A DNA stretch of 64,000 bases from IMGVR_UViG_3300028735_000003:186001-250000; one strand, 5' to 3'; positions 31,543 through 60,377 are shown, counted from the first letter of the stretch. Translations and numbers: made by a program. The notes: generated from the sequence alone by a model not told the origin.

Positions 31543-33666
31543 TCACTTCTTAAATATATAAATATATTCATTCTTATCTATTCCAGCAGATTTATTTAAA
31601 TGACTCCTTATAGTTCTTAACGAAACCAAATCAATCGGCTCACCAAATTTATCTATTGCCATTTGTAACATCTTATGATAATTTTTTACATTAAGCCCAA
31701 ATAATTTATTTGGTTTTAACATATATTTAATATTATTAAGCGTATTCTCCCAATAAACATTATAAAAATAATCTTGCCCATTATTATATGCTTGAGTTAA
31801 ATCTGAAGAATAATATTCTTGATTAAAATAAGGCGGGCTACTAAAACTAAAATCCACTGTATTTTCATTTAATCTCACATTTTCAGAACCAGATTTAATA
31901 AGTTGTATATTCTTTAATCCTAAAGTATCTGACATTACTTGCAATTCATCAGTTGTTAATGGGTCTACACCAATATATTTCCTATTACAACTGGCTGCCC
32001 CTAGCATTCTTCCTCCCCATCCAGCAGAATAATCATATATAGTATCACCAACTTCACTATATTTCATACACAAATATTTTGCTATATATGGTTTAAAAAT
32101 AGATATGCTTGGCACCAAACGTGAAGAACGCATTCCTTGTATCAACATTCGGAAAGAAATATTAAAAGTTTCTTTATTTTCAGTGCCATACCAATCAAGA
32201 CCCAATCTATTACGTATTAATCGTTTTAATTTAAAATCATCATTAAATATTTCAATCATTGTTGGACAGTCTTTTTCTGTTGCATCATAAAACTTATGAC
32301 AGAAATACTTACAAACATCGGTTGCCAAAGAACCATTATTAAATAATTCATTACTTGATAAATCAGGAACAGTGTTACATAATTTTTCCCAACTTTTATT
32401 TACTTTATCAAAATTATCTGGATATAACCATCCTTGTCTTCGAAAATGTTCAAAAATTGGTTCTATTAAATTTTCCCTTTCATTTCTATTAAGAGTTTTT
32501 ACATATTGTGCAGTAATTAGTTGCCCATTAACCTCTACAATCTTATCATATAAATATTGATAACAATGTTTTAGATAAAAATGTTTTATTTTAGTTACAG
32601 TTCTTGGATGAATGTTATGATTATCAGATATTTGTTTAATAGTATTACCAATAGAAATTTCATTAATAATACTATTTTTTTCTGTCTCTGATACTTTATA
32701 CTCTTTTCTAATAAAAGTCCTTGAATTTTGATGATTAACTAATTCAAGATATTTTTCATATTTCCTTGTTAACCGAATATCTTCATTAGAATTTAAATAC
32801 AACCAATCCATTATTTTTAATATTTTTTCATTTCCGCTTTGTTCTAATTCATAGGTATTATTATTAGTTTTTGATATACTATGAAAATTAACTATAAACC
32901 CTAAATTTGATAATATTATTTTTTGAATAGCGCCACAACATTCATTTGTTGAAACCAAACTCCATTTCCATTCTTTAGAATTTTCCCTATACGAAAGACT
33001 ACCATCACCATCAAACATACCCCTAATAAAGTGTTGATCTAGATTGGTATTTAACCATGCAGGGTATTGTATAATAAAACTTTTAGCACGAGGGCAACCA
33101 TGTTCTATCATTTTTTGACAAACATGTTTGCTATACATTTTTACAGAACAAGATGGATATGTTTTGTCATTTATATTTGATAAATATCTGATAATCTTAG
33201 ATGTTGGCAAATCAATAAAATTACACAATTTTACCAAATGATTATAGTCTTCATCTTTTAACGATAAAGAAAATGTATTAATTTTGTCTGAATTATAAGC
33301 ATCAGCATAAAAAAATCCTAGCCAATAAGCTTTTTCTTTAGTATCAATAACATCAAATATATGTTCATTAAATCTTGTAAATCTCAATGCTTCTAATTTA
33401 TCTCTTAACAGCCCTCGTTCTTCGACCCATTTTTGTATTCTTCTTTTATCTATAGAAAACTTTATACCTAAAGACTTTGCTGATAATCCTTGTTCATATA
33501 AATAGCATATACGATCTATTTTATCTTCATTAAAATCTTCTTTAATAAGTTGCCATTTATTATTTTTTACAACTTCTCTAACATCTTTTTCTGGTAATTG
33601 CAATAATACTGCAATTCTTTTTATTGCAAATCCATCTTCTATCATTTCTTTAATTTTTTCATTCAT
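31543..33666 (-). CDS. HTH-LAGLIDADG endonuclease fused to amino-DNA methyltransferase
   Basis: KAYWLGFFYADA and HFIRGMFDGDG LAGLIDADG motifs; C-terminal IYDYSAGWGGRMLGA (SAM-binding) and FSSPPYFNQEYY (catalytic SPPY). Confidence 0.8.
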   Translation of the reverse strand: MNEKIKEMIEDGFAIKRIAVLLQLPEKDVREVVKNNKWQLIKEDFNEDKIDRICYLYEQGLSAKSLGIKFSIDKRRIQKWVEERGLLRDKLEALRFTRFNEHIFDVIDTKEKAYWLGFFYADAYNSDKINTFSLSLKDEDYNHLVKLCNFIDLPTSKIIRYLSNINDKTYPSCSVKMYSKHVCQKMIEHGCPRAKSFIIQYPAWLNTNLDQHFIRGMFDGDGSLSYRENSKEWKWSLVSTNECCGAIQKIILSNLGFIVNFHSISKTNNNTYELEQSGNEKILKIMDWLYLNSNEDIRLTRKYEKYLELVNHQNSRTFIRKEYKVSETEKNSIINEISIGNTIKQISDNHNIHPRTVTKIKHFYLKHCYQYLYDKIVEVNGQLITAQYVKTLNRNERENLIEPIFEHFRRQGWLYPDNFDKVNKSWEKLCNTVPDLSSNELFNNGSLATDVCKYFCHKFYDATEKDCPTMIEIFNDDFKLKRLIRNRLGLDWYGTENKETFNISFRMLIQGMRSSRLVPSISIFKPYIAKYLCMKYSEVGDTIYDYSAGWGGRMLGAASCNRKYIGVDPLTTDELQVMSDTLGLKNIQLIKSGSENVRLNENTVDFSFSSPPYFNQEYYSSDLTQAYNNGQDYFYNVYWENTLNNIKYMLKPNKLFGLNVKNYHKMLQMAIDKFGEPIDLVSLRTIRSHLNKSAGIDKNEYIYIFKK

Positions 33667-33727
33667 TTGTGCAGCCTCGCAAAACAATATAACATCATAT
33701 TAATAGATTGTCCTGGTTCACATGCAC

Positions 33728-33794: not shown

Positions 33795-34528
33795 TTAGGC
33801 TCCGACAACAACTGATTTACGTCCTGCAGCGACACCACGTGGGTTGACGATTGCAATTCCGATTATTTCAGATACTACCCAGCCAAGCTTAAGTTGTTTT
33901 GGCTCATCGGCTGGTAGAACTTCAATGTCTTGGCGAATTGGCATAACACCAACGAACTCAGGGTCTGCGGTACCATAGATGGTTCCTGGAGGAACGATCT
34001 TGGAAACCATAATATCAGTTCCCCAAATGTGGGCGTATAGACCAGTTTGTAGAACTTCTCTCATTGTTACAGGATCGAAGTCTCCACCACCTGTACCTTG
34101 ACCACCACCGGATCCCCACTTAAGGATATCAGTGAACTCATTAATGTTCATGAAATACTTGGTTGTTACCAAGTCCCAGCGGTCGATCTGTTGCTTAATC
34201 TCAACAAGGTCTCTCTTCAAAAGACCTGCGTCAGCTATGTCAGTCAATGTATTTTCAACAGAAGCTGCTGCATCTAATGCTGCGAATACGTTTGCATCTT
34301 CTTGTGCCATTATTTCCTGGCGAGCCTTTTGGACTGCACGGTCAATGACATTGAATCTGCGACGTTTTACTTCAGCGATGCGGACGGTTGGGTTTGCGTA
34401 AATCTCAAACTCAGGAACTACAACACGATCACCGAACACACGGGATTCTGGTCCTGTACCATTGCTTGAAATAACAACGGCTGCTACATCGATATCTCTA
34501 TCGTATGTTGGCATAGCACCTTGGGGTA
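33795..34528 (-). CDS. Major capsid protein, exon 2
   Basis: HK97-fold-like: PEFEI..NP, RFNVIDRA...EIMAQED, ends IAIVNPRGVA. Joins exon 1 to give VVDPLPQGAMPTYDRD; 337 aa in total. Confidence 0.9.
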
Positions 34529-35589
34529 CAAGGTTTGTGTTAAGATCAATTTACATTGATCTGATAAGTCATTTCTGCTTATCTCTCCATATCTCTATGA
34601 AGTTCAGACTGTATCACCATTATCTTGCGATAACGATTGGCATTCTAGTCGTTGAGGATCGGCATACAATTTGTATTTCATACATTCAACAAAATATTCT
34701 TCCACTAATTTACTTGTTTTTAATGTATTTTCTTTGTTTAATGATAAGTAACAATATTCTTTGTTGTTTCTAACAAATTTACAAACCTTACTTCTAATAT
34801 CAAATGAAGCTTTTAACATATTTTGCAGTTTTATATTTTCCATTTCTGAAAAACCTTCTGTATGTAGCCTCAAATTAATATTATTTTTTGTTATATTGTT
34901 GCTTCCATCATCCATTATCCAAAAAGCCAAAGATCTTAATGAGAGATAATTTACTAATTCATCTCTGATTATTTTCTTATTATTTTCATAAAATAAGTCA
35001 TAAAAGAATTTAAATTCATTATGAGTTACCGTATTAAAGGTATACATTATTGAATTTTTTCTTTTATCTTTTCTAATATTGATATTATTTACAAAATTAC
35101 CTAAAACTGCTTTTTTGTAAAAAACTAAGTCTTTTTGTTTTTCACAATGCGAGATAATTAATCTATATGTTTTTTTATTTCTGCCATGTGGTGCGATACA
35201 TCCATCACCAAGAAGCGTCCCAATAACCATTTCACGTTGTTCTTTAGCTAACGGGATTCGTTTGATTATTTCAAATTTTCTTTGCTTTGGATTTTTATCG
35301 ATATTATAAAGCTTTAAATATCTAACTACAGTACTTTTATTTACTTGTAAGATATCTGCTATTTCATAAGCTGTTTTTCTTTTTTTAACATATAGCTCTT
35401 GTAAAATATCTCTATCTAAATCTTTGCTTTTCATTCTGCCTTTCCTGCTGATTGTCTATGTCATCTTTAAATTTTCACTTTATTTGTTTGTAAACCAGCT
35501 ACGGTGCTTGGTTTGTATGATCATAAAGTATTAAAGCGTTTAGAGTTCCCAGCATACAGCCAATTTTTACATCCGCTACCCTTAATTTA
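34529..35589 (-). ncRNA. Group I intron (1061 nt) in major capsid gene
   Basis: Exon 1 ends in U (GAUCCGU); intron IGS GGGUAGCGGAU pairs with exon 1 (P1, U.G) and exon 2 UACCC (P10). Core elements UGCUGGGAA, AAUCAGCAGG, UCAACGACUA, GAUACAGUC; terminal G at 34529; splicing restores the frame. Confidence 0.93.
34604..35434 (-). CDS. Intron-encoded LAGLIDADG homing endonuclease with N-terminal HTH
   Basis: IGTLLGDG and LAFWIMDDGS motifs intact; 3' end overlaps the intron core. Confidence 0.9.
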   Translation of the reverse strand: MKSKDLDRDILQELYVKKRKTAYEIADILQVNKSTVVRYLKLYNIDKNPKQRKFEIIKRIPLAKEQREMVIGTLLGDGCIAPHGRNKKTYRLIISHCEKQKDLVFYKKAVLGNFVNNINIRKDKRKNSIMYTFNTVTHNEFKFFYDLFYENNKKIIRDELVNYLSLRSLAFWIMDDGSNNITKNNINLRLHTEGFSEMENIKLQNMLKASFDIRSKVCKFVRNNKEYCYLSLNKENTLKTSKLVEEYFVECMKYKLYADPQRLECQSLSQDNGDTV

Positions 35590-35869
35590 ACGGATCAACT
35601 ACCAATGCTCTACGTGCGATACCGTGGTAGTCTAAGTTTCTACGAATTGGGTTTGCCATAGCCTGAGCTAATGCAATCTTTCCGTCTTGTGTCATAATAG
35701 CACGAGAAATAAGCTCGTCACGTTTTTCGTCGCTAAGAGCCACTTGTCCTGCCATTCCAATATTAGATGGTTGATTCTCTTCAAGAATAGCTGCATACTT
35801 TACTAAAGTCTGCAACGCATCCTTTAAAGATGAGGCGTTCATTGCGCCTTGATTGTTAAACATATTCAT
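35590..35869 (-). CDS. Major capsid protein, exon 1
   Basis: AGGAG RBS; LAQAMANPIRRNLDY.GIARRALVVDP, continued by exon 2. Confidence 0.9.
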
Positions 35870-37195: not shown

Positions 37196-38578
37196 TTAAT
37201 GTATTCCAATACTATTAAGGTCTTCTTCTAGTTGCCTTGCCATCTCATCCACTTCCTCTGTTCCTCTCCTGGTTTTATGAGTGGAGGGTTGAGCCTTTGG
37301 TTTCGGAGACTCCGGTGAAAAATATGGAGTTGGTGTTTCTGGTCTCGAAGGCTGTGGTGAAAAATATGAAGTTGGTGCTTCTGGTTCCGAAGACTCCGGT
37401 GAAAAATATGGAGTTGATGTTTCTGGTTTCGAAGGCTGCGGTAAAATTTCACTTCTTTTTAAAACTGCCTCTTGCATTCGTTGCCGCGCATTTTCTGCTA
37501 AACTTTGGGATTTAGATAATATATTCAAAATCTCTTGAATTGATTTCTTATATGGAGTGAGGGCTCTCATCACGTCATCAAAATCATCAGCAACTAAACC
37601 ACCATCGCCATGCAAAAATCGAACTCTATCTATCAAATCGTTAATTACTCCCTTTTCCTCTGTTTGTTCAGACTTATATGTTTTTGATCTAAAATTATCA
37701 ATAACCTGTTCAATAGCTGGTAATATTTCTTCTGCTTCCTTAGCAAACATTCGATATGCATTAACTATTGTATCTCCAGGTTGAGATTTGGCTAATTCAA
37801 CTAATTCGCTAGCTGTTCTTGGTTTTTGTAATTCGTTAATAATTGGAAGTACCCGTTGATACGTATTAAAAAAATTCATTAATAATTGTCTGAAATTACG
37901 CATTTGATTCAAAAAATTTTGACTATATGTATTACCAATAAAAAAGCCAGCATTATCATCTAATAAATCATCAATTTCCGCAATTAATTTTTGATGATTC
38001 TTAGTAAAGCCTTCATCAGTAAATGGAAGATGTTGTTGTAAATATACAGCGCCCAAGATCACAGCTACACCAATTAAAATGGGAGTTGCTAATACTGCTG
38101 GTGCTATAGCTTTTTTTGTTATTGTTGTGGCTTGCTCTAAGCATACATCTGCTAAAACACGCAATTTTTCTTTATGTTTATTATCTAAATCATTACCAAT
38201 TCGAACTAAAGATAACAATAGTTGTTGCTCTGCATATTTTCTTTGAGTCAAATGACCATTAGGCGTCTTTTGTACTATATGTCTCAAAATATTTTGTCTC
38301 TCATTTATGTTTTCTACAAGACCATTTAATTTATCATATGAAGGAGAAATAACTACTGGATTTTTGTGTGCATCTTCTATAATATTTCTCTTATACTTCA
38401 TTCCGCTAGGTGCATCTGGTTTTACACCATATAATGCTTCAATAGCAGAAATATCAAGAGAATCCATTCTAGGATTAATCTCCAATTTCTTTTTAATTTC
38501 CTTCGGTGTAGACTTGGAAATTAAGCCATTTTCTTGCGCTATTTTAGCAAATTCATCAAAAATTTCGCTATGTCTCAT
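37196..38578 (-). CDS. Putative head-internal protein with one hydrophobic segment and C-terminal PYFSP repeats
   Basis: KxA motifs (AKIA, RKYA, TKKA); hydrophobic stretch right after KKA. Confidence 0.6.
   Translation of the reverse strand: MRHSEIFDEFAKIAQENGLISKSTPKEIKKKLEINPRMDSLDISAIEALYGVKPDAPSGMKYKRNIIEDAHKNPVVISPSYDKLNGLVENINERQNILRHIVQKTPNGHLTQRKYAEQQLLLSLVRIGNDLDNKHKEKLRVLADVCLEQATTITKKAIAPAVLATPILIGVAVILGAVYLQQHLPFTDEGFTKNHQKLIAEIDDLLDDNAGFFIGNTYSQNFLNQMRNFRQLLMNFFNTYQRVLPIINELQKPRTASELVELAKSQPGDTIVNAYRMFAKEAEEILPAIEQVIDNFRSKTYKSEQTEEKGVINDLIDRVRFLHGDGGLVADDFDDVMRALTPYKKSIQEILNILSKSQSLAENARQRMQEAVLKRSEILPQPSKPETSTPYFSPESSEPEAPTSYFSPQPSRPETPTPYFSPESPKPKAQPSTHKTRRGTEEVDEMARQLEEDLNSIGIH
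37305..37440. repeat. Coding tandem repeat (three ~39-nt units, P-E-T/A-x-T-x-Y-F-S-P)
   Basis: GGTGAAAAATATG occurs three times at ~39-nt spacing. Confidence 0.8.
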
Positions 38579-38627
38579 TATTTAGCTCACATTGGTAATT
38601 TATTTATATGCTTTCATATGCCATTGA

Positions 38628-39731
38628 TTACTGTACTTTTTGTGCCACATCATCAATGAATAAGTCTACAATCTGTTTTTTACTGGTAAACATTTTGGGA
38701 AGATATACTACACTAGAGCCGGTAGCTGTTCTATTAAATTGCTCAATTACTCTAACAACTTCCTGAAAAGTAGGTAATGATCGTATTAAATCCTCTAATC
38801 CATTTAGCCCAGTATATACTTCTTTAGCGAATTGAATTAACATATCGCTAATTCCAGCATAATTATTAACAAACCCTTCTGCCCAAAAAGAATCTCTAGT
38901 ATTATACTTGATATCAGAATATGCCGGATTACGTGGGAATTTAGTTTGCTTTGATACGTATACTGAAGACGGTGTTCCAATTAATGACGATGTAAATCCT
39001 CCTCCAGAAGCACCACTATCAGATGACCCTCCACCAATAAATTTATTGATAACATCACCAGCAACAATAAATCCGGCTGATGCTAAGGCTATTTTTATTA
39101 TTATTCCAAAAAATTTAATCAAGATTGAAATAATCTTTCCTTGTAATAGACCAAATGTTAACCCACCAATCCAGGATGCATTCTTTTCAAGAATACCCTC
39201 TTGAAATTCAATTATAGCTAATTTAACTAGTCTTACATCACGCATTTGTTGTTTTACGTCGTAAGAACCAGATTTATTTCTTCGAATTCTATCCAGAGCT
39301 GCCCTTTCATCATCATCAGTTACAGGTTCTGAATTTGATTTTACAGCATTGCTCACAATATCATCAATATTTTGTGACGTTGTTGGAAACCCACTAGAAA
39401 TAATTCCTTTAACGGATTCATAAATTGACATCAACAAGCCCCCAACATTTACTTTAAATACTTGTTGCGCTAACGCTAATAATCCGCCAATCCATGGATG
39501 ACCTAACGTAGAAAAAAGAACACTTATTGCTCCTGGAGATATTAAGTTAATTACGCTTTCTGCTTTGTTATCTGGATCTATCTTAGAAGCAAAATAGTCT
39601 TTAATCTTTGTCATCAAAGACATAACATTTCCACCAATGCCAGCTTCTTTAATTAAATATGTATTATCGACCAATGATTCTACAATCATCATGTCAACAT
39701 ATAGTTTTATTTCGCTATCATTAATGGACAT
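38628..39731 (-). CDS. Putative head-internal membrane-interacting protein
   Basis: IKEA, VKLA, EKNA motifs; long hydrophobic segments after KNA. Confidence 0.55.
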   Translation of the reverse strand: MSINDSEIKLYVDMMIVESLVDNTYLIKEAGIGGNVMSLMTKIKDYFASKIDPDNKAESVINLISPGAISVLFSTLGHPWIGGLLALAQQVFKVNVGGLLMSIYESVKGIISSGFPTTSQNIDDIVSNAVKSNSEPVTDDDERAALDRIRRNKSGSYDVKQQMRDVRLVKLAIIEFQEGILEKNASWIGGLTFGLLQGKIISILIKFFGIIIKIALASAGFIVAGDVINKFIGGGSSDSGASGGGFTSSLIGTPSSVYVSKQTKFPRNPAYSDIKYNTRDSFWAEGFVNNYAGISDMLIQFAKEVYTGLNGLEDLIRSLPTFQEVVRVIEQFNRTATGSSVVYLPKMFTSKKQIVDLFIDDVAQKVQ

Positions 39732-39739
39732 TATAACCC

Positions 39740-41410
39740 TTATTTATTACGAAGTTTTTTTTCTGTAGCAAGCTCCCATTGATATATTAATTGCCCGTTA
39801 CGTTGTGTGAAATAAGACTGTTGATCAATATTATTTTTATATTTTTTGTTGATATCAATAATGTACCCATATGTTGAATATAGCGTGTTAATTACACTGG
39901 ATGTAGTAGATATTAACGAAAACAAATTCTCACAAAAAGCCATCATGTGACTAAAGCCTTTTTTTAATTTGTAAGAAACTATTTCAGCATTGTCGGTTAG
40001 GTTAATTCTTGTATATGGAATATTCATTATTTGATTTTGTATTGTATCAATAATCCTGCTAGCCTTATCATAAGAAAGCCTGTCCACGTTTGTACTATAT
40101 ACACTTGTATCAAACTTAGCGTAATCTTCCAGGAATTGTTCAATCTTAGTGAAATCGATTGCAGTTTCTTCTAGCGGCAAATGATCAAGCAACGAAGTAA
40201 GAGCCTGTGTCTGTTGAGTATTTAATCTTGTCATTCCTCCACCTGTTGCTCCAGTTGCTCCAGTTGCACTAGTTGCACCAGTTGCACCAGTTGCACTAGT
40301 TGCACCAGTTGCACCAGTTTCACCAGTTGCACCAGCATTAGTAAGTGAACAATTTTGTTGTGTTTTTGGATCTTTAATCTGAGGTCCAAATTCTTTAATT
40401 GCTTCCAAATATCTAGCTGCCATCTTACCATAATTTGGGTTTTTGTCTTCGTAGGAACTAGCCATTTGATTTAAGTAGAGAGCACGGTTATATAACACAC
40501 GAATAACTGAACAAGGGTCTCCTTTATAAGGATCCATAACGCCTATTGCCTCATAAGAATCTGGATCTGCGGCTTTATCCCAAAAAGAGCCTTGTTTTTT
40601 TTGGATTTTCATATCACGTAACCACCCAATTAGATTGCCAAGACTAGATAAATTACCAATTGTTAATTTAATTTTCATATCTCTGAAATCCGGAGCAGAC
40701 TGTACCCCAGCCATATATCTTCCATCAGCACCAGGAATAATTATATCGTCCGGGAATGCATCCACAACGAGATCTGGATTAATATCTGGTGTTGTAATAG
40801 TAGTTGTCTTAACTGGCTGTTGCTGATTTGCTGGAAGATTACGATTTAATTCGCCAATAAGACTCTTTACTGCAATTTCAAACGGTTTATTATCGTCTAC
40901 ACTGGGTACTGCTTCATCTCTAAGATATGATAAATAATTTATCAAGCCATCCTTATCAGCATAAACAATTTCCCTAGTTGGTTGATTAGTGCTATCACGA
41001 TTACTCAGATTTGCATCTAAGCTCTCAAATGACCATGCATTTTGTGGTATAGATTGTTCATTATTTAACCAAGCAATTCTTTTGCCTGCCCATTGTATTT
41101 TATTACGAGCTACCCAATCTAAAAAATGACCCAATGTACGAACATCTTCCATTTTTAAATCAACTGGAGCACTGTTGGCAGTACTTATTGGAGCCACCTT
41201 TTTATCAACGGCAGAATCTCCAAGCTGCCTTTGCATATTGGTTCCTAATGCTTTAGCTAATTCGAATATTCTAGGAAGTTCTTTTGCTTGCTGCGTTGCG
41301 GCGATAGAATTATATGGAGATGGTGAGGTCGGTTGTCTAAATTTTTTATTATAGTCAATTCCTGCTTTTATTAACGAATTAATTAATTCTTTGTCATCAA
41401 AAATAGACAT
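39740..41410 (-). CDS. Hypothetical head-cluster protein (556 aa) with ATG/ATS linker
   Basis: ATG 41410 just after the upstream stop at 41418-41420; the longer ORF call would overlap that gene. Confidence 0.65.
   Translation of the reverse strand: MSIFDDKELINSLIKAGIDYNKKFRQPTSPSPYNSIAATQQAKELPRIFELAKALGTNMQRQLGDSAVDKKVAPISTANSAPVDLKMEDVRTLGHFLDWVARNKIQWAGKRIAWLNNEQSIPQNAWSFESLDANLSNRDSTNQPTREIVYADKDGLINYLSYLRDEAVPSVDDNKPFEIAVKSLIGELNRNLPANQQQPVKTTTITTPDINPDLVVDAFPDDIIIPGADGRYMAGVQSAPDFRDMKIKLTIGNLSSLGNLIGWLRDMKIQKKQGSFWDKAADPDSYEAIGVMDPYKGDPCSVIRVLYNRALYLNQMASSYEDKNPNYGKMAARYLEAIKEFGPQIKDPKTQQNCSLTNAGATGETGATGATSATGATGATSATGATGATGGGMTRLNTQQTQALTSLLDHLPLEETAIDFTKIEQFLEDYAKFDTSVYSTNVDRLSYDKASRIIDTIQNQIMNIPYTRINLTDNAEIVSYKLKKGFSHMMAFCENLFSLISTTSSVINTLYSTYGYIIDINKKYKNNIDQQSYFTQRNGQLIYQWELATEKKLRNK
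40245..40335. repeat. 9-nt coding tandem repeat (CCAGTTGCA) encoding A-T-G/S
   Basis: Seen directly. Confidence 0.85.
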
Positions 41411-41417
41411 ATTGGTC

Positions 41418-42752
41418 TCACTTAGATTGATTTCCAATTGGTGGACGTGGCGCGCTACGATCTCTAAAAACTTTTTCTGCCCAAGTACGTGTATCTGGTC
41501 CAGTAGCCCAACCCCAGGGGTGCCCAGGTTGTATACCTCTGGCAGCATCTTCTTGTCTAATTCTTTCAATATCTTGTTGCTGTACTACATGCGGTGTTAA
41601 TTGTTGGCTGGTCACACCAGGAGCTAAAGGTCCGCCAGTACTAAATTGTTCTTCATATCCAGTTAATGGTTGACCGCCAAAGTATGTACCATATGATATT
41701 GCACTATTAATTTGTTGCATAACATATCTAAGAAAACGTATTTTTGTATTTTTATCAATTTCATTCCTCTGATATCCGCCCCATCTTGTTATCATATCAA
41801 CAAGGACATCCGGTTTGATAAGTGCAGTTAATGGAAATTGATCTATTACTTTTGGAGTTCCATCAACATCGAATATAGTAATACGTGGAAGATACAACTC
41901 ATCAATATTCTTCATTAAATCCTGGTACTCACTAGTATCTCCTGCATCTTTTGTTTGTGTTGGTTGCTGTGTCCACAATGGAGTAGAATCATCAGTGAAT
42001 CTACGATATGCAGGATTTTTCGTTACACTATTTACAAAACCAAGGTAGAACCTTGTTAATTTATTAATGATAATTGTAAGCCTAGTAGCAAGTGAAGTCT
42101 TATCACTTGATGAAAGTTTCTTTAAATCATAGTTAGTAGGAATTAACCCTTTCATCGTTGTAGCATCATCTTTGGTAAAAATGTTTTTTACATAATCGGG
42201 GGCATCAAAATCTTCAGATGCTCTTATGATTGCATCACCAAAAGCATATAAATTACGCAAGGCATTTTGGGTTCTAAATCCCCAGATACCATCTACAAAT
42301 CTTTCTCTACCTCTGCCACCGATCCTAGCTATATTATCAACTACATTTTCCATCTGTATTAACTCATCATCGTACACTGGACTTTTAGTTTCTGCAGTAT
42401 CAGATCCTTTTGTTACAGCCCGCTCATTTCCACGTAAAGGAGAACTATTAAGATAGTGTAATGTTATGAAGTCATTAAATTGACGAAAATCTTGTGATGG
42501 TTGAGGCGTGGTGGGGGGCTGTATAGGTGTTGGTCTATTAATTCTAGGATCTCTTTTTATATGATAGTTAATCGCAGTACTGGCAAAAACCTGAATAGCA
42601 TTTTGCATTTCTTTTACTGCTGTAGTAGAAGGGTCAGCATGATAATTGGTCTTTGCAGAGTATGTTTGTGTAGGTCCAATGATCCTTGTACCACTAGGTG
42701 ATGGAACATCAGCCATCTTAGTAATCATGTCTATAATATCTTTGTGGTTCAT
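41418..42752 (-). CDS. Head-cluster protein with peptidoglycan-binding-like motif
   Basis: VDGIWGFRTQNAL resembles the PG_binding_1 DG.wG..T..AL motif; N-terminal TKMA. Confidence 0.5.
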   Translation of the reverse strand: MNHKDIIDMITKMADVPSPSGTRIIGPTQTYSAKTNYHADPSTTAVKEMQNAIQVFASTAINYHIKRDPRINRPTPIQPPTTPQPSQDFRQFNDFITLHYLNSSPLRGNERAVTKGSDTAETKSPVYDDELIQMENVVDNIARIGGRGRERFVDGIWGFRTQNALRNLYAFGDAIIRASEDFDAPDYVKNIFTKDDATTMKGLIPTNYDLKKLSSSDKTSLATRLTIIINKLTRFYLGFVNSVTKNPAYRRFTDDSTPLWTQQPTQTKDAGDTSEYQDLMKNIDELYLPRITIFDVDGTPKVIDQFPLTALIKPDVLVDMITRWGGYQRNEIDKNTKIRFLRYVMQQINSAISYGTYFGGQPLTGYEEQFSTGGPLAPGVTSQQLTPHVVQQQDIERIRQEDAARGIQPGHPWGWATGPDTRTWAEKVFRDRSAPRPPIGNQSK

Positions 42753-43963
42753 TATCTAATCCATTTGTTATAGAAATCTTTAACGTCGTACTCAATAACA
42801 TTTAGCTCATCGTCAATATCGTCAATTTCTGTATTATTTTGCTGCTTTGCATCCAGTCTTTTATCTAAAAGACTTAACTGACCAATTTTTTCATTAATAA
42901 AGTCGGTGCCAGTAATTATATCTTCTGGTTTCTGATACGTATTAACAGTTGATTTATATGATTTTAATTTGTTTATTAAATCATTAATCTTTTGTTTTAG
43001 TTTATCTTTATTAAGATTAATTTCTTGTTCTGGTAAATCAAATTGTCTTTGTGCAGGTTGAGGAGTAGGTTGAGGAGTAGGTTGAGGAGTAGGTTGAGGA
43101 GTAGGTTGAGGAGTAGGTTGAGAATTAGGTTGAGAATTAGGTTGAGGGTTAGTCACAATACCCAATTCATTATATATATTTTGTTTATCAATCTCATCGA
43201 TTCTTTTCTGTAACACTATGGAATCATCTAGTAAATTCTTGCTAACTTCTGGCAAACTTTGTATTTTCATCCAAGTACTTTCACTAACGCCAAAACCATA
43301 CCATGATGGCTCTGCCGCTTGTTTTAAGTCATCAATTACATCTTTGGCTTGACGCATTCTTTGTATATTTGGATCAGTTAGCAAATCACTAAGATATTTG
43401 GTGCCAATATTTCTTACTAAGTCTTTGTTCGCTTCCTCAACAAATTTTTGCATAATCATAATAACACGCCTTAATTTATTACTAATTTCATTTATCAAAG
43501 CGGTTTTATCATCTTGCCCCAAAGATACTTTTACGGCATTAATAATGCTTCTTGCAGTTGTTAATTTACCAGTAGGCTTTTTATTGACCATTTGCATCAT
43601 CTTAAGATGCTGATCCACGATTGTTTCAATAATGGCATCACCATGTACGCCATCTAATTTATGGCTTCCGTTTGGGTGTGCTTCTTGAACTGCTTTACTA
43701 TCACATTCTATAGCAGCTTTTTTATACAAAATGAAATTATACTCTAATTCTTCAGCATATTTAGCCATCCCAGATTCACGCAATCCAGCACATAATTTCA
43801 TTATATTTTCAGACAAATTTTTGGTTGGTCTCAAATCCAATTTTGGTTTTCTAGTAGCAACTTTCTTTAATGGATCCTCCTTTATTAATCCCTTATCTTT
43901 AGCTAATTTTGCCAAAGAACGCATTGTCTCAGATTCTTCAAAATTTATGTGCTTAAAAGTCAT
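42752..43963 (-). CDS. Head-cluster protein, N-terminal region similar to 37196-38578
   Basis: AKLA, KKVA, AKYA, YKKA; EAHP module; QPTP repeats. Confidence 0.6.
   Translation of the reverse strand: MTFKHINFEESETMRSLAKLAKDKGLIKEDPLKKVATRKPKLDLRPTKNLSENIMKLCAGLRESGMAKYAEELEYNFILYKKAAIECDSKAVQEAHPNGSHKLDGVHGDAIIETIVDQHLKMMQMVNKKPTGKLTTARSIINAVKVSLGQDDKTALINEISNKLRRVIMIMQKFVEEANKDLVRNIGTKYLSDLLTDPNIQRMRQAKDVIDDLKQAAEPSWYGFGVSESTWMKIQSLPEVSKNLLDDSIVLQKRIDEIDKQNIYNELGIVTNPQPNSQPNSQPTPQPTPQPTPQPTPQPTPQPAQRQFDLPEQEINLNKDKLKQKINDLINKLKSYKSTVNTYQKPEDIITGTDFINEKIGQLSLLDKRLDAKQQNNTEIDDIDDELNVIEYDVKDFYNKWIR
43055..43148. repeat. 12-nt coding tandem repeat (AGGTTGAGGAGT) encoding QPTP/QPNS
   Basis: Seen directly. 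Confidence 0.85.
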
Positions 43964-44093
43964 GTTGCCTCGAATACATCAATTTGATCTATAATATGCA
44001 TAATTATAGCATACTTATACTAAATAAAAAGATATGCAATAGTAAAATAAAAATTTATAATATTTATCTACCTGTTAAGTTAAAATTAAAGTT

Positions 44094-44783
44094 TTACCAC
44101 CACAAACATTCTATCATTGGGTTCATAGGAGTAGGTGGGGCAGTAACCATAGCAACAGCAGGATGTATAGCACTTGGTCTTCTAGTAGTTAAAAATCCAA
44201 GCTCACTAACATATAAATTAGCTCTAACTGGATATTGTTGATTAGTCTCATATTGATCTGTTTGAAAAAACATCCTATTAAACCAAACAGTCATTCTACC
44301 AGAACCTTGTGTGCTATCGTCGCCAGGAATATTTGGAACTTGATATGTATAATTTACAATTGTTCTAATAGCATTTGGTGTTCCGCTACCAGTTAAATCA
44401 AAATTCAATGCTGTACCAGCTAAAAATGTGATTATTCCATTTACAGGATTTAATACTACATTGACAGTGGAATTAAAGCTGGACGGTAAAATATTAGGTT
44501 TTTTTAATTCTGCTTTGATATCAATAGGAGTAATTAATTGCCCTCCAGGACCAGGAACTCCTGTAGCCGGAACTATTACCACTTCATTCCATGAAACGTT
44601 TGTAAATGCTTTAGTCTTAATATCATCAATTATTCCAAGTGGAGCAGTACCGTTGCTGACAGTTGCCATAACTTGGTTTCCAATAACTGTTAGTTCTGCA
44701 ATTTGACCTGGCTGAAATTCTGCTGACGGGTCACATATAAACGAAGCTGGTAAAGTATTTCCAACCTGAACAAGTCTTAGCAT
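44094..44783 (-). CDS. Putative capsid decoration-like protein (paralog of 36003-36668)
   Basis: MLRLVQ.G..LP start and DDSTQGSGRMTVW...TDQYET. Confidence 0.55.
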   Translation of the reverse strand: MLRLVQVGNTLPASFICDPSAEFQPGQIAELTVIGNQVMATVSNGTAPLGIIDDIKTKAFTNVSWNEVVIVPATGVPGPGGQLITPIDIKAELKKPNILPSSFNSTVNVVLNPVNGIITFLAGTALNFDLTGSGTPNAIRTIVNYTYQVPNIPGDDSTQGSGRMTVWFNRMFFQTDQYETNQQYPVRANLYVSELGFLTTRRPSAIHPAVAMVTAPPTPMNPMIECLWW

Positions 44784-44863
44784 TGCATTTCCTCTCTAAC
44801 CCCATAATATCTCTTCCATATAACATATAACCTAAATATGAAAGAATGAGTAGAAATGCAGGT

Positions 44864-45283
44864 TTAATCTATTTCATCTTCGAATGTCATTGTGGATTTA
44901 TTATCGATATCCTCAACTTCTAATTCATCTGAAATATCTGTATCTAATAAATCATCGGCAGCATTTCCATCATCGGAGAGATTAAAAACCGTACCATGAT
45001 TCAACAGATTCTTAATCATTTGATCTGAATTTTGCGGCTTATGTCTATCCGGAATAGCTCTAGGATCTCTGGGGCGGTAATGTTTCTTTGCAATTTTCAA
45101 TAATATTGTTAACAATTCATCTGCATTACGATGCATGCCCGTTTCATCTAGAATATCTATTGCAGACCCAATATAATCTACGGCTTTATCCAATGAGTGC
45201 ATACCTTCTTCAACTTCTGCTTCTGCAAGTTTGAGCTGCATGTTATGGATTATCTCATTTTCTGATATAGATTTTTTAATCAT
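44864..45283 (-). CDS. Acidic head-cluster protein
   Basis: Shares KAVDY...A..ILD..G....A motif with the upstream gene; LKIA. Confidence 0.6.
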   Translation of the reverse strand: MIKKSISENEIIHNMQLKLAEAEVEEGMHSLDKAVDYIGSAIDILDETGMHRNADELLTILLKIAKKHYRPRDPRAIPDRHKPQNSDQMIKNLLNHGTVFNLSDDGNAADDLLDTDISDELEVEDIDNKSTMTFEDEID

Positions 45284-46068
45284 TTTTTTAATTTATTTTC
45301 TAGCTTGGCGAGCTCTTTATAATAATCTGACTTGATCTTACCTTTTTGTGATTTTCTGGTTTCAACCATATGATCCATAGCAATTTCTTTGGCTTTTTTA
45401 GGATCAGTAGTATGTTCCATTTCTACTTTTTCACCAGCCTCTAGTTCTTCTGTATCAAATTGATCTGGTCTATAATTATCTGCAACACCGCCAGAAATTT
45501 CATCTTCCCATTCTTCTGATGCAAACTTTGAGAACAAACTAAGTGCTTTCAACGCCGTCATAAGTCGGCTATTAAATTCATTTTTTAAGTGATCTAACAC
45601 TTCAGGATCACGAACATCTATCTTTTTTAACTCATTTTTAAGAGTTTTGAAAAAGCCCTGTTGTTTTGTTCCTTTAGCTAAATCGTATAATTTTCTTAAT
45701 ACAGCAATTTGCACACCTATTGGCGATGACCAAAATACGTTCTCAAGGTCTTTTGAAGTTACATTAGTAGATTTGATCTGTTTAATTATCTCAGAAATAT
45801 TGTCTTCTGATATATAGTCTTCTGACACATAGTCTGATTCTTGAGGATCAGTTTGATCTCCTTCAGGTGATATATCCTCAATAACCTCAGTAACCTCTTC
45901 AGCCTCTTTATATAAACCAACTTGTTCAAATATAGCTGCCGCAGCACTGAGATAATCAATTGCTTTTGCTAATTTATTGAAATTGTATTTATTTTCAATT
46001 TGATTGGAAACAAGCTGCTTTTCCATAGAGTGCATCAATTCACTCTCAATGCTGCCACTCTTGAACAT
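45280..46068 (-). CDS. Head-cluster protein with C-terminal DUF5661-like domain
   Basis: GG.AD...G.KVEMEHT.D...AKEIAMDH..E...YY follows SKFA. Confidence 0.6.
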   Translation of the reverse strand: MFKSGSIESELMHSMEKQLVSNQIENKYNFNKLAKAIDYLSAAAAIFEQVGLYKEAEEVTEVIEDISPEGDQTDPQESDYVSEDYISEDNISEIIKQIKSTNVTSKDLENVFWSSPIGVQIAVLRKLYDLAKGTKQQGFFKTLKNELKKIDVRDPEVLDHLKNEFNSRLMTALKALSLFSKFASEEWEDEISGGVADNYRPDQFDTEELEAGEKVEMEHTTDPKKAKEIAMDHMVETRKSQKGKIKSDYYKELAKLENKLKK

Positions 46069-46082
46069 TTTAATTCCTTAAT

Positions 46083-46826
46083 TTAATATTTCCTTGTTGG
46101 TTTCTTGCTAGAAGAAGTAGATTTGCTTGAATCCGTCTTGCTAAAAGAAGTAGATTTGCTTGAACTAGGCTTGTCAGAAATTGACTTACTATAACCCGGT
46201 TTGCTTGTACTTGTCATCTTCTTATATTTTGCGCTATTTGTATAACTCTTAGATTTATTAGAGTCCTTATTGCAAGGCTTTTTCTTACAATTAGTGTATT
46301 TATTCTTAGCAGTTTGCTTTTCTTTCTTTTTCGTCTTCTTTGCTTCGACGATCAAGGAGGCTAACTTAAGACTTACACTGGAACTCTTTTCCATGCCCAA
46401 TGAATCAAGGGCTGCAGAAGCGGTTAGCAAACTATCAATGGCGATATCATATGCTGCGGAGACATTATATAAACTGTCAATATCGCTTGTACTTGATGTA
46501 TCAGTAGAATCAGAAGTATATTCGTTAGAATCAGAAGTATATTCATCACTATCAAAATCTTCTATATCATTTTCACTACTCATATCACTACTCATATCAC
46601 TACTCATATCACTACTCATATCACCACTGTAATCATCTTCATCACTTGTGTCACTACTAGATACACTAGAGTCATATACTGACATGGAACAACTATCACT
46701 ATCTTCTTTTTCACTCATATCCGATGCAAACTTATATGTTGTGCCGAATAGTTTTTTATGTTGTTGACTTTTTAGTACTGCATCCATTGTTGCAGCAACG
46801 AAATCTGATACGTTTTTGTTATTCAT
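46083..46826 (-). CDS. Ser/Asp-rich then Lys-rich head-cluster protein
   Basis: YKFA followed by an acidic SSDM repeat region; LKLA followed by a basic tail. Confidence 0.6.
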   Translation of the reverse strand: MNNKNVSDFVAATMDAVLKSQQHKKLFGTTYKFASDMSEKEDSDSCSMSVYDSSVSSSDTSDEDDYSGDMSSDMSSDMSSDMSSENDIEDFDSDEYTSDSNEYTSDSTDTSSTSDIDSLYNVSAAYDIAIDSLLTASAALDSLGMEKSSSVSLKLASLIVEAKKTKKKEKQTAKNKYTNCKKKPCNKDSNKSKSYTNSAKYKKMTSTSKPGYSKSISDKPSSSKSTSFSKTDSSKSTSSSKKPTRKY

Positions 46827-46850: not shown

Positions 46851-50504
<3,654 letters not shown>

Positions 50505-50505
50505 C

Positions 50506-50670
50506 TTATCTCCCAGTAGTATCTTCCTGCGACTTAGAACCAAGTTTGCTATTTTCAGAAGACTTTTTTGCCTTCTTAACTAAGTTCTTAAGATTATTCT
50601 TCTGTTCCTCAGTTAATTCATCGTCATCTAGAACAGATACTATTTTGCCATCACCATGTTTTACAAACAT
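50506..50670 (-). CDS. Small unannotated protein (54 aa, MFVKHGDGKIVSVLDDDELTEEQK...)
   Basis: GGAG RBS, ATG 50670; TAA ends 1 nt before the protease ATG. Confidence 0.65.
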   Translation of the reverse strand: MFVKHGDGKIVSVLDDDELTEEQKNNLKNLVKKAKKSSENSKLGSKSQEDTTGR

Positions 50671-50784: not shown

Positions 50785-51432
50785 TTACGACGACTGCAAT
50801 CTATTCTTTAATTCTTGATTTAATTGTTCTTGCCTTTGGTTAAAAAGATCCACTATTAATGGCGTTTTCTTCTCTATTTTTGTTTGAAGCTCGGAACTAA
50901 TCGAATCAACCCAATTATTAGCTAAAATATTGGTTCTTATATGATCAATGATTCTATCATCGGCAATTTCATCTATTTCTTCACATTGCTTTTGTATCGC
51001 TTCAATAGCAGCAACTACGTTTTTAGAAAAGTCTTGGTCGTCAAGACTATCAAATAATTTAACAAAATCATTTACTTTGTTTTCAAGATCATTTATTGAA
51101 TTTATAAATGATTTCATAAGTTTAATTGTTTGAGTGTCAGACATAAATATCTGCATTGACTTAACGCATTTAAAAGAAGCTATTTTAAAATTGTTGAAAT
51201 TCTTTACAGCCTGGTCTCTAAACCTTCTAACAGCAGCGCGAGCCTTTATGACTGATTCTGGAGTTATATCATTATTTTCTTTGAATGGCGTCTTCATAAT
51301 ATTTAGATGATCAGATGCTAATGCTAAAAGTTTAATAGCAGAATTGAAATATATGATAGCTCTTTCTGCCTCTTGTTTTTCAGCATCAGATACATCATAC
51401 GTCATTTGTACGGAATAAGCTCGTTTAATCAT
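50785..51432 (-). CDS. Helical head-cluster protein
   Basis: 215 aa, begins MIKRA. Confidence 0.65.
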   Translation of the reverse strand: MIKRAYSVQMTYDVSDAEKQEAERAIIYFNSAIKLLALASDHLNIMKTPFKENNDITPESVIKARAAVRRFRDQAVKNFNNFKIASFKCVKSMQIFMSDTQTIKLMKSFINSINDLENKVNDFVKLFDSLDDQDFSKNVVAAIEAIQKQCEEIDEIADDRIIDHIRTNILANNWVDSISSELQTKIEKKTPLIVDLFNQRQEQLNQELKNRLQSS

Positions 51433-60300: not shown

Positions 60301-60377
60301 AATCCACTGCCAACTGGTGGAATAGCCCCCCTTTTCTCTAAAAACTGCTCAGACTTAGATTTTCTATAATTAGACAT
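57321..60377 (-). CDS. Portal protein containing one intein (626 aa after splicing)
   Basis: Follows terminase; FY..NP.V.NAI...YP, GEAF, SHLARR.SPYE.RG motifs; Pro/Gly-rich tail. Confidence 0.85.
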   Translation of the reverse strand: MSNYRKSKSEQFLEKRGAIPPVGSGLIESNIAHTSAHMSQGVPQVSALMAKSVSAFRREALTEEVKQGLFKDGTGPTFNEDGMTSNAVVTSLVGITKNAQVVSGGSSAGSSNYRGGNGDVVKQTPEVYSPLWLNSNLNLPRDRPTINAWCRSFYALNPFVHNAINLHSTYPISKLNIKCPNKDIEKFFNDMIEEIDLMNICVQIAQEFWLLGEAFVYAELDESKGKWSRLVIQNPDYMLVKRTVVANEPIIMLRPDENLKKIVFSNKPSDIEQRKQLNQHIIDSVKHGENIPLDNFHVSHLARRISPYEIRGTGLPVCIFRQLMLFDKLRESKYAQADNMINPLTLVKIGSADFKPTFADLEAWRNVFECYDEETEVLTDSGFKKFYEVINYTEKLDKISPKENVKIACFNSNNEQLEYHYATGASVYNYNGNMFHFKNEKLDIKVTPNHKMWTSEKIDDYNDNRSLKKSIWSDWKKIEAKDLNLNNYNKFRSKINWQGNDNVIFIDVCGKQIPVELYLELLGYLLNEGRLYINDKHQYTVGISQTTNKNYNKMRQCLDSFSKCINIPYIQRIEKRSEYTNNQQYIWSAVFYSKELYDYFENIIGDMNVETKAQFKQIPRNVLDFSPRLLNILLNALIDGSGSVYKNNKKDSDRFAYCSTSKQLADDIYEIAYKCGYVPSMSIRNNKKHLNGRRLPLYTVLWSNSNKWNYPLVYKTPRNSKTKIKQNIVKIEKYNGKVWCFEVPTGLFITRRNGKITIQGNSAQYDKDFKIFTHEGVTVEKVGYNQGIYDISNDITQIIKEIYVGLQVPSVLMDGGADTTYANGGVALDVLRQRYMQFRNMMSIWLKRKIFAPISKIQGFYDYSNGEKQLIVPDVDWNHMSLFDAGDYINNLVTLTQGDGAQKRVSLHTLFRSMGLEYENELRKMRREIVDAEIFEKEKAALKEMPLNALRALDEEDEIPEAKNQQEGATSASEGTPLPGETSSGGGLPGLEGLPNTPPPPPMPGGGGEGSGGAPPTL
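58095..59270 (-). other. Intein in portal (392 aa) with LAGLIDADG-like domain
   Basis: VFE|CYDEETEVLT...VTPNHKM...VWCFEVP...IQGN|SAQY. Confidence 0.9.

What the first reader, a model, noticed from the sequence alone, without database searches (positions are those of the whole stretch)
38145..46445. Second shared leader module: L-x3-A-x2-L(D/E/R)-x2-G-x4-A helical hairpin in five head-cluster genes
Seen: 46083 SLLTASAALDSLGMEKSS; 45280 YLSAAAAIFEQVGLYKEAEEV; 44864 YIGSAIDILDETGMHRNADEL; 42752 NIMKLCAGLRESGMAKYAEEL; 37196 SLVRIGNDLDNKHKEKLRVLAD. It usually ends at or shortly before a KxA. Inference: a modular capsid-targeting propeptide shuffled onto different cargos, functionally analogous to the T4 capsid targeting sequence.
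Basis: partly seen in the sequence, partly recalled or inferred. Interest (0 to 1): 0.6.

Follow-up and report, generated by a model that had tools for sequence, protein, structure and literature searches.

The report
N-terminal docking domain of phage head-core proteins

Summary

Only two carriers are demonstrably homologous: p262 (45280-46068) and p139 (44864-45283), with profile-profile E 9e-23. The hairpin is the back part of a 65-residue N-terminal domain made of an N-helix, a Gly turn and a second helix. It resembles a TPR unit and ends in K-I-A in the p139 type.

A profile of this domain finds 722 protein clusters in metagenomes. In 149 of the best 150 it starts within the first 7 residues.

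- **p262 slot:** what follows is absent in most relatives (71-81 aa proteins) or unrelated between relatives (helical, DUF5661, Cys-rich, Lys-rich).
- **p139 slot:** a variable insert comes before a conserved acidic C-terminus.
- **p247 and p403:** they have similar hairpins, but the statistics are borderline (P 0.001-0.02; genome-wide ranks 8 and 29 of 419).
- **p460:** not supported.

Best reading: a docking domain that builds these proteins, and whatever tail they carry, into the scaffold core. This works like the T4 capsid targeting sequence but is unrelated to it and much larger. Cleavage at KxA and presence in virions could not be tested.

The parts
45089..45283 (-). p139 N-terminal domain (residues 1-65: N-helix, Gly49 turn, second helix, ending K63-I64-A65).
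   Evidence: hhalign with the p262 family: 99.5%, E 9e-23. AF2 pLDDT 83.5, helices 4-48 and 51-69. Column statistics.
44864..45088 (-). p139 tail: basic linker, a conserved 'HGTVFN..DD' block, and an acidic C-terminus ending FEDEID.
   Evidence: Family tails aligned and listed. The C-terminal block is conserved across 57 of 59 p139-slot proteins, by single-linkage BLAST cluster.
45868..46068 (-). p262 N-terminal domain (residues 1-67), a paralog of the p139 domain.
   Evidence: In most relatives this slot encodes only the domain (71-81 aa).
45280..45867 (-). p262 tail: acidic linker, helical region, and a C-terminal DUF5661-like segment (residues about 205-259).
   Evidence: Pfam DUF5661 scores 16.7 bits, below the cut-off of 27, in the window. 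The same domain scores above the cut-off in relatives P0126, P0147 and L004. The motif VEMEHT occurs only in these slots.
46296..46475 (-). p247 helical hairpin (residues 118-177, turn at G144). Possible distant or analogous copy of the domain's hairpin.
   Evidence: AF2 helices 118-142 and 145-177. Strongly conserved in 59 orthologs. hhalign P 0.004-0.04 at this site. Rank 8 of 419.
46743..46826 (-). p247 conserved N-terminal helices (residues 1-28). They weakly resemble the domain's N-helix and are separated from the hairpin by about 85 residues of acidic Ser/Asp-rich low complexity.
   Evidence: P 0.03-0.09; two colinear weak HMM stretches in several orthologs.
43709..43819 (-). p403 hairpin region (residues 49-85), borderline similarity to the domain. 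It lies inside the N-domain that p403 shares with p460, as an insertion that p460 lacks.
   Evidence: hhalign P 0.001-0.005. Rank 29 of 419 as a single sequence. Insertion shown in the p403/p460 alignment.
A conserved helix, but not a copy of the module.
   Evidence: No profile alignment lands here. It has no Gly turn, and it is not colinear with p403.
46851..50543 (-). p1230: prohead protease domain (about residues 47-262) fused to a scaffold-like region of about 950 residues that is helical, repetitive and acidic. Presumed docking partner and processing enzyme.
   Evidence: tblastn to phage G gp19: 34% identity, E 6e-22. PHROG head maturation protease, E 6e-15. Conservation profile.
35579..35869 (-). 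First part of the major capsid gene (aa 1-97). It includes a 40-residue N-terminal extension, absent from phage G gp27, with a helix that weakly resembles the first hairpin helix.
   Evidence: tblastn with the unsplit 337-aa MCP of L005. Alignment with phage G gp27. hhalign P 0.035, rank 24 of 419.

Best explanation
The hairpin is part of a 65-residue N-terminal helical domain: an amphipathic N-helix running into a TPR-like helix, a Gly turn, and a second helix. It defines one previously undescribed protein family. The family occupies two adjacent, always co-occurring gene slots (p262 and p139) just downstream of the protease-scaffold fusion gene in a large clade of uncultivated jumbo phages.

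Inferred mechanism: the domain is a docking or incorporation domain. By helix-bundle packing with its paralog and/or with the helical scaffold region of p1230, it builds these proteins into the prohead core. Whatever follows residue 65 then goes into the capsid with it. That tail can be nothing, a helical domain, DUF5661, Cys-rich or Lys-rich sequence, or the p139-type linker with its acidic C-terminus. The prohead protease may later trim or remove parts.

The hairpins of p247 and p403 are either very distant copies or independent helix-turn-helix elements doing similar packing. The p460 segment is unrelated.

Shown: the homology, the N-terminal position, the sharp boundary, the tail variability, the synteny and the helical fold. 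Inferred: core docking, pairing of the two paralogs, and any cleavage.
For: - Homology of the p262 and p139 N-termini: E 9e-23, and E about 1e-4 within the genome.
- 722 clusters at E<=1e-3 and 405 at E<=1e-10 among 1.84 billion representatives. The domain starts at residues 1-7 in 149 of the top 150, in proteins of 69-390 aa.
- Conservation ends abruptly at residue 65.
- Both slots are present in 74 of 80 related loci, in fixed synteny: protease-scaffold, p247, p262 slot, p139 slot, p229, p403. Divergent-tail members P0002 and P0083 sit in the same p262 slot.
- Tails are unrelated to each other: module-only, a helical domain ending 'AKFFV', DUF5661 at 37-44 bits, Cys-rich and Lys-rich.
- AF2 shows a long helix 4-48 of which only the back half is covered by helix 51-69. 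The N-helix is left free to pack with a partner.
- Complex prediction for p139 domain x p262 domain: weak support, ipSAE 0.41 against a best control of 0.00. In the tool's calibration, 58 of 80 solved complexes and 2 of 110 mismatched pairs reached the mark, but passes at 0.60 or under are more often wrong than right. The runs agree in at least 95% of contacts, and partner pLDDT is at least 64.
- Head context: protease, MCP and portal hits.
- Known precedent: T4 internal proteins keep only a conserved targeting sequence in front of diverse payloads (PMC3012670), and N-terminal propeptides are common in giant-phage head proteins (PMC10052503).
Against: - No experimental or proteomic data exist for this clade, so virion or prohead location is inferred from gene position only.
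- Most p262-slot proteins carry no payload. This fits a small scaffold protein as well as, or better than, a delivery leader.
- The complex prediction is only weak support, and no test against the scaffold or the capsid protein was possible.
- Foldseek finds no significant structural relative, and Pfam and PHROGs give nothing for the domain.
- A helical hairpin is a generic element.
- The nearest cultured relative, phage G, has no detectable copy.
Confidence: 0.5

Rival explanations
1. One reading: one modular capsid-targeting propeptide (the hairpin), shuffled onto five different head-cluster cargos and cut off by the prohead protease at or just after a KxA. It would be functionally equivalent to the T4 capsid targeting sequence.
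For: - N-terminal position, sharp boundary and diverse tails in the p262 slot.
- K-I-A is the last conserved triplet of the p139-type domain (94/84/90%).
- [KR][ILMVQ]A is about 2.4 times more frequent in nine head-cluster proteins than in the rest of the genome (0.48 against 0.20 per 100 aa).
Against: - Only two of the five carriers are statistically secure. p460 is rejected.
- In p247 the hairpin is internal (residues 118-177), not a leader.
- In the profile alignments, the KxA of p247 and p403 does not fall in the column of K63-A65.
- K63 is only 27% in the p262 type.
- Most p262-slot proteins have nothing to deliver.
- The p139 family keeps a conserved C-terminus rather than swapped cargo.
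- The KxA enrichment can be explained by Lys/Ala-rich helices.
- Another short motif (DDNDA) is far more specific to core proteins.
Confidence: 0.15
2. The p262-slot and p139-slot proteins are small accessory scaffolding or shape-determining core proteins, in the manner of T4 gp67/gp68 or the helix-loop-helix scaffold gp7 of phi29 (from my own knowledge of those systems). The domain itself is the working part, the tails are dispensable decoration, and nothing is delivered. The proteins leave or are degraded at maturation.
For: - The minimal, most common p262-slot form is the domain alone, 71-81 aa, and strongly conserved.
- The two paralogs are always adjacent, next to the protease-scaffold gene.
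- The fold is all-helical with a free N-helix.
- There is weak support for pairing of the two domains (0.41 against control 0.00).
- The sizes (about 75 and about 140 aa) recall T4 gp67 and gp68, from memory.
Against: - No sequence similarity to any annotated scaffold or core protein in PHROGs or Pfam.
- Recurrent acquisition of folded tails (DUF5661, Cys-rich) in the same slot suggests the tails matter.
- This reading cannot be told apart from the best explanation without data on what stays in the virion.
Confidence: 0.25
3. Apart from an ordinary tandem duplication (p262/p139), the shared motif is a chance or generic resemblance between amphipathic TPR-like helix-turn-helix elements. The duplicated proteins could be non-structural, for example an assembly chaperone or regulator.
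For: - The domain profile hits a bona fide TPR_12 repeat protein ten times (P0001).
- Several unrelated ORFs score as well as p247 (ranks 3-7).
- p215, upstream of the protease, gives P 0.02 with a helix that has no turn.
- The literal consensus matches nothing.
Against: - The two secure carriers sit in the core of the head block in every one of 74 loci.
- The p247 hairpin is invariant in its family at the same residues (I130, D131, L133, A136, S137, G144), and nearly all 59 orthologs align to profile columns 28-60.
- The loose pattern occurs in four of five adjacent genes and nowhere else in 419 ORFs.
Confidence: 0.1

Closest known systems
T4 capsid targeting sequence (CTS) of internal proteins IPI-III and Alt
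   Same: - A conserved N-terminal element stands in front of highly diverse payloads and is encoded with the head genes.
- It is thought to direct proteins into the scaffolding core (PMC3012670).
- As at the T-even IP loci, variability here concentrates in one syntenic slot.
   Different: - The CTS is a peptide of about 10 residues removed by gp21. Here the element is a folded 65-residue helical domain with no sequence similarity to it.
- Cleavage is unproven.
- Most copies have no payload.
- The protease belongs to the phage G/mycobacteriophage type and is fused to the scaffold.
Long N-terminal propeptides of phiKZ/SPN3US-type giant-phage head and ejection proteins
   Same: - These are giant phages in which many head proteins, including paralog families, carry N-terminal regions of 20-254 residues.
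- The regions are removed by the prohead protease and may target the proteins to the core (PMC10052503).
   Different: - The lineage and protease are unrelated.
- Those propeptides are defined by mass spectrometry and an A/S/G-X-E type cleavage motif. Here nothing has been measured, and the candidate motifs (KIA, DDNDA) are only sequence patterns.
Small helix-loop-helix scaffolding and core proteins (phi29 gp7, P22 gp8 C-terminal helix-turn-helix, T4 gp67/gp68); comparison from my own knowledge
   Same: - They are short, acidic, all-helical proteins encoded beside the capsid and protease genes.
- A helical hairpin is the interaction element.
- Paralogous small core proteins occur next to the major scaffold.
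   Different: - There is no detectable sequence or fold match.
- Here the hairpin is N-terminal and frequently carries extra domains. In P22 and 80alpha the hairpin is C-terminal and binds the coat protein.
Tetratricopeptide repeat (TPR_12-like) helix-turn-helix unit
   Same: - The sequence pattern is a small or hydrophobic ladder, then Gly at the turn, then Ala in the second helix.
- The domain profile matches ten repeats of a TPR_12 protein (108 bits in total).
- One relative (L004) fuses true TPR repeats directly upstream of the hairpin.
   Different: - This is a single unit, not an array.
- Pfam TPR models do not match the domain even at E<=1.
- Foldseek hits to TPR/HAT proteins are not significant (E>4).

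Membership tests
T4-type CTS-bearing internal proteins | N-terminal consensus of about 10 residues similar to the T4 CTS | tested here: not met
   No PHROG or Pfam match for any of the five proteins. The conserved element is 65 residues long, with a different sequence.
T4-type CTS-bearing internal proteins | Conserved leader followed by diverse, unrelated payloads | tested here: met
   p262-slot tails are absent, helical, DUF5661, Cys-rich or Lys-rich at one syntenic position.
T4-type CTS-bearing internal proteins | Leader removed by the prohead protease; payload present in virions and ejected | not testable with these tools
   No proteome exists for this clade. The phage G proteomics paper gives no cleavage sites, and phage G lacks the module.
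TPR repeat proteins (Pfam TPR clan) | Match to a Pfam TPR model at the gathering score | tested here: not met
   No TPR family listed for the p139 or p262 domain, or for P0005, even at E<=1.
TPR repeat proteins (Pfam TPR clan) | Tandem array of three or more helix-turn-helix units | tested here: not met
   AF2 shows one hairpin only. Reciprocal similarity to TPR_12 repeats of P0001 exists, so the unit is TPR-like, not a TPR protein.
New 65-residue N-terminal domain family (p262/p139 type) | Colinear match to the domain profile from residue 1 to about 65, with M15, L19, A34, L38, A41, I44 and G49 | tested here: met
   Met for p262 and p139. Not met for p460. Inconclusive for p247 (split, P 0.004-0.04) and for p403 (P 0.001-0.07).
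DUF5661 (PF18905) | Pfam gathering score of 27 bits | tested here: inconclusive
   The window p262 C-terminus scores 16.7 bits. Orthologous-slot relatives score 36.9-44.4 bits and share the VEMEHT core.
Phage scaffolding proteins | Present in proheads, absent from mature heads, and binds the coat protein | not testable with these tools
   Only gene position and helical character are available.

The most novel reading that the evidence does not exclude
The 65-residue domain is a self-sufficient, transferable capsid-loading tag. Any polypeptide fused behind residue 65 is built into the procapsid core of this jumbo-phage clade. The p262 slot would then be a fast-evolving payload locus, like the T-even internal-protein loci, that delivers host-directed proteins with the DNA. 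A further speculative layer is that the TPR-like hairpin recognises the EEVD-like acidic C-terminus of the p139 family (FEDExD or FEEEVD), giving a head-to-tail accessory scaffold.
Probability: 0.2. Interest if true: 0.7.

Novelty: new variant of a known kind. Interest (0 to 1): 0.45.

Why it matters
If the domain is a folded loading tag for the procapsid core, it would be the first such element defined for the phage G-related jumbo phages. These are abundant in metagenomes (over 700 clusters at 50% identity) but almost entirely uncultivated.

It would mark which genes encode internal or ejected proteins in these genomes. It would identify a hypervariable payload slot likely to be involved in host takeover or counter-defence. 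It would also offer a handle for packaging foreign proteins, as the T4 CTS did. Even in the more ordinary reading, as accessory scaffold proteins, it gives these unannotated genes a family definition with a clear domain boundary.

Tried and rejected
- **In-genome HMMs.** They did not recover p247, p403 or p460.
- **Phage G.** Its head-region proteins gp8-gp32 gave only noise against all module profiles.
- **Similar phage records.** Megablast of the region and tblastn of p229 against 50,697 phage records found nothing.
- **Deeper p403 family.** A large-database search returned only relatives with at least 49% identity, so it added no sensitivity.
- **Structure search.** Foldseek against the PDB with the domain model found nothing at E<=0.001.
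- **KxA as a cleavage motif.** The 2.4-fold enrichment is real but explicable by composition, and the motif is not in register between families. I left it as unproven.
- **Scaffold similarity.** The module did not align with p1230 (P 0.08-0.4).
- **p215 (50785-51432).** I considered it as a sixth carrier and rejected it: P 0.02, a helix with no turn.
- **Complex prediction.** The p139 and p262 domains gave only weak support (0.41, best control 0.00). I do not count this as evidence of binding.
- **Side checks.** Rfam found no intron model in the split capsid gene. A literature search on the genome length found no paper.


Full report
**Setting.** The window is bases 186001-250000 of a single 353,765-bp contig with 33% G+C and almost all genes on the minus strand. 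It has no close match among 50,697 phage records.

The unsplit major capsid protein of its relatives is 53% identical to gp27 of Bacillus phage G. The first 260 residues or so of the 1230-aa ORF at 46851-50543 match phage G gp19 and a PHROG head maturation protease. The 1018-aa ORF at 57321-60377 is a portal.

The region of the finding is therefore the head-morphogenesis block of a jumbo phage only distantly related to any cultured one. In transcription order it reads:
- p1230, the protease fused to a scaffold-like region of about 950 residues
- p247 (46083-46826)
- p262 (45280-46068)
- p139 (44864-45283)
- p229 (44094-44783)
- p403 (42752-43963)
- p444, p609 and p367
- p460 (37196-38578)
- p221
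- the capsid gene

None of the proteins from p247 to p460 has a meaningful Pfam or PHROG match.

Within the genome, only p262 and p139 recognise each other. phmmer gives E about 1e-4 among 1005 ORFs. Leave-one-out HMMs recover these two but not p247 or p403, and p460 never appears.

I fetched 80 syntenic loci from IMG/VR using the very conserved neighbour p229 (80-91% identity). From these I built ortholog families for every gene of the block. Profile-profile comparison then gave three results.
- The p262 and p139 families share their first 68 residues, with 99.5% probability and E 9e-23.
- p403 and p460 share a different N-terminal domain (96%, E 2e-9). In that alignment the p403 hairpin is an 18-residue insertion that p460 lacks.

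A deeper profile from 150 diverse representatives gave these P values:
- p247: 0.004-0.02
- p403: 0.001-0.003
- p460: 0.03-0.08, at another site
- six control families of the same block: 0.06-0.8

The same profile, ranked against every one of the 419 minus-strand ORFs of the genome as single sequences, gave p262 rank 1, p139 rank 2, p247 rank 8, p403 rank 29 and p460 rank 86. The written consensus matches nothing literally. A loosened pattern matches only the four neighbours, but it was derived from them.

So two carriers are secure, two are borderline, and one is rejected.

**What the module is.** The hairpin is not a unit of its own. In both secure families the conserved block runs from residue 1 to residue 65.

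Invariant or nearly invariant positions are M15, L19, A34, L38, A41, I44 and G49. In the p139 type the block ends K63-I64-A65 (94, 84 and 90% of 102 representatives), after which no residue exceeds about 20%. The p262 type ends x-L-A.

AlphaFold2 on the 87-sequence alignment gives pLDDT 83.5, with a long helix 4-48, a turn at 49-50 and a helix 51-69. This is a hairpin whose front helix overhangs by about 25 residues. Foldseek finds nothing significant.

The profile matches a TPR_12 repeat protein ten times. One relative, L004, carries true TPR repeats fused in front of the hairpin. Pfam TPR models do not match the domain itself. I therefore call it TPR-like, not a TPR protein.

p247 folds as N-terminal helices 6-28, a disordered acidic stretch, and a hairpin of helices 118-142 and 145-177 with the turn at invariant G144, followed by a disordered Lys/Ser-rich tail. 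Its N-helix weakly resembles that of the domain (P 0.03-0.09). In several orthologs both halves align colinearly. A split, diverged copy is possible but unproven.

**How the family behaves.** A profile search of 1.84 billion representative proteins found 722 clusters at E<=1e-3 and 405 at E<=1e-10. In 149 of the best 150 the domain begins within the first 7 residues of proteins 69-390 aa long.

Both slots are present in 74 of 80 loci, in fixed order.

The p262 slot is striking. 38 of 59 distinct proteins are 81 aa or shorter, so they are the domain alone. The rest carry mutually unrelated tails:
- a helical domain of about 95 residues
- DUF5661, at 37-44 bits in relatives and 16.7 bits in the window
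- Cys-rich sequence that looks like a zinc ribbon
- Lys-rich sequence
- a weak PG_binding-like piece

Two divergent-tail members that I located sit in the same syntenic slot.

The p139 slot behaves differently. After the domain comes an insert of 0-250 residues. Then follows a conserved block (a basic stretch, 'HTKGLT', 'HGTxFN..DD') and an acidic C-terminus ending FEDExD. It is not a shuffled cargo.

**Mechanism.** I commit to the domain being a docking element that builds these proteins into the scaffolding core, by helix packing with the paralog and/or the helical part of p1230, taking any tail along. Five things support this:
- the head-block position
- the strict N-terminal placement
- the sharp boundary
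- the free N-helix in the model
- the slot-specific tail turnover, which mirrors T-even internal proteins that keep only a conserved targeting sequence (PMC3012670)

Giant-phage precedent for N-terminal regions that are later removed comes from SPN3US (PMC10052503).

A complex prediction for the two domains reached only weak support. The ipSAE was 0.41 against a best control of 0.00. In the tool's calibration, 58 of 80 solved complexes and 2 of 110 mismatched pairs reached the mark, but passes at 0.60 or under are more often wrong than right. The runs agree in at least 95% of contacts, and partner pLDDT is at least 64. I do not lean on it.

Whether the domain is cut off is open. However, KxA is not in register in p247 and p403, it is rare in the p262 type, and its 2.4-fold enrichment in head proteins can be compositional.

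A more specific short motif turned up by accident: D-[DEN]-N-D-[AV], usually followed by Lys or Arg. Its counts are:
- 129 occurrences in 57 of 70 p247 orthologs
- one fixed site in 10 of 70 p1230 orthologs, where the DDND core is conserved more widely
- 4 of 73 p139-slot orthologs
- 2 occurrences in 878 other ORFs of the loci

This motif is a better candidate for a processing site or repeat unit. It is equally unproven.

**Rivals.** The abundance of module-only proteins fits small accessory scaffold proteins (T4 gp67/gp68-like or phi29 gp7-like, from my own knowledge) at least as well as a delivery tag. The two readings differ only in what remains in the virion. A purely generic resemblance explains p460, and possibly p403 and p247, but not p262/p139.

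**Comparison and novelty.** The domain works like the T4 capsid targeting sequence in its logic, but it is not a member. It has no sequence similarity, it is six times longer and folded, and the protease is of a different type. It is an undescribed family, widespread in metagenomes. I rate it a new variant of a known kind, of moderate interest until a proteome or an assembly assay exists.

Noticed in passing
window 33801-35869: The major capsid gene is split. Residues 1-97 map to 35579-35869 and residues 94-336 to 33801-34529 of the unsplit 337-aa protein of relatives. The 1,049-nt insert (34530-35578) carries a LAGLIDADG_2 homing endonuclease ORF at 34604-35434 (126 bits). Rfam finds no intron model at E<=0.01.
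   Followed up: partly
window 60453-63971 and 57321-60377: The terminase-like ORF has an intein (Intein_splicing 67 bits, plus LAGLIDADG_2 and LAGLIDADG_3). The 1018-aa portal has a LAGLIDADG_3 match just under the cut-off and PHROG hits to unrelated families in its middle, suggesting another intein. Together with the ORF at 31543-33687 (LAGLIDADG_3 plus HTH, fused to a part resembling Bacteroides phage proteins), the head region is crowded with mobile elements.
   Followed up: partly
loci L001-L080 (p247, p1230 and p139 orthologs); window p1230 residue 963 (about 47655): The pentapeptide D-[DEN]-N-D-[AV], usually followed by Lys or Arg, occurs 129 times in 57 of 70 p247 orthologs. It also occurs in 10 of 70 p1230 orthologs and 4 of 73 p139-slot orthologs, against 2 times in 878 other ORFs. 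It is a candidate prohead-protease site or repeat unit of the core proteins.
   Followed up: partly
Its 'AHP ... VEN' segment also weakly resembles a conserved piece of the p1230 C-terminal region (P 0.0037).
   Followed up: partly
window 44864-45088 and p139 orthologs in L001-L080: The p139 family ends in an acidic C-terminus (FEDExD; FEEEVD in L004 and L005) that recalls the EEVD tails bound by TPR clamps. It also keeps a conserved 'HTKGLT..HGTxFN..DD' block. The function is unknown.
   Followed up: no
L004:3791-4939: In one relative the p139-slot gene has true TPR repeats (TPR_2 at 41 bits, TPR_1 at 36 bits) in place of the N-helix. These are followed by the hairpin, DUF5661 (43.5 bits) and the usual C-terminus.
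   Followed up: partly
window 44094-44783: p229 is 80-91% identical across 80 metagenomic loci from contigs of up to 480 kb, and it has no Pfam, PHROG or phage-record match. The protein atlas gives only a weak lead (0.82) to lambda gpD-like decoration and capsid cement proteins.
   Followed up: partly
window 35750-35869 (capsid protein residues 1-40): The capsid protein of this clade has a conserved 40-residue N-terminal extension that phage G gp27 lacks. It starts MNMF like some p262-slot proteins and contains a helix weakly similar to the first hairpin helix (P 0.035). It is a possible propeptide ending near GLAGQ.
   Followed up: partly
window 46851-50543: In this clade the protease is fused to a scaffold-like region of about 950 residues, with an internal duplication (about residues 432-500 and 518-590) and a Pro/Ala-rich linker. 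In phage G the protease (gp19, 300 aa) is a separate gene.
   Followed up: partly
protein P0164 (homolog of p403): One homolog is deposited as a hypothetical protein of a 'Candidatus Berkiella sp.' metagenome-assembled genome. This is either a binning artefact or a hint at the host group.
   Followed up: no
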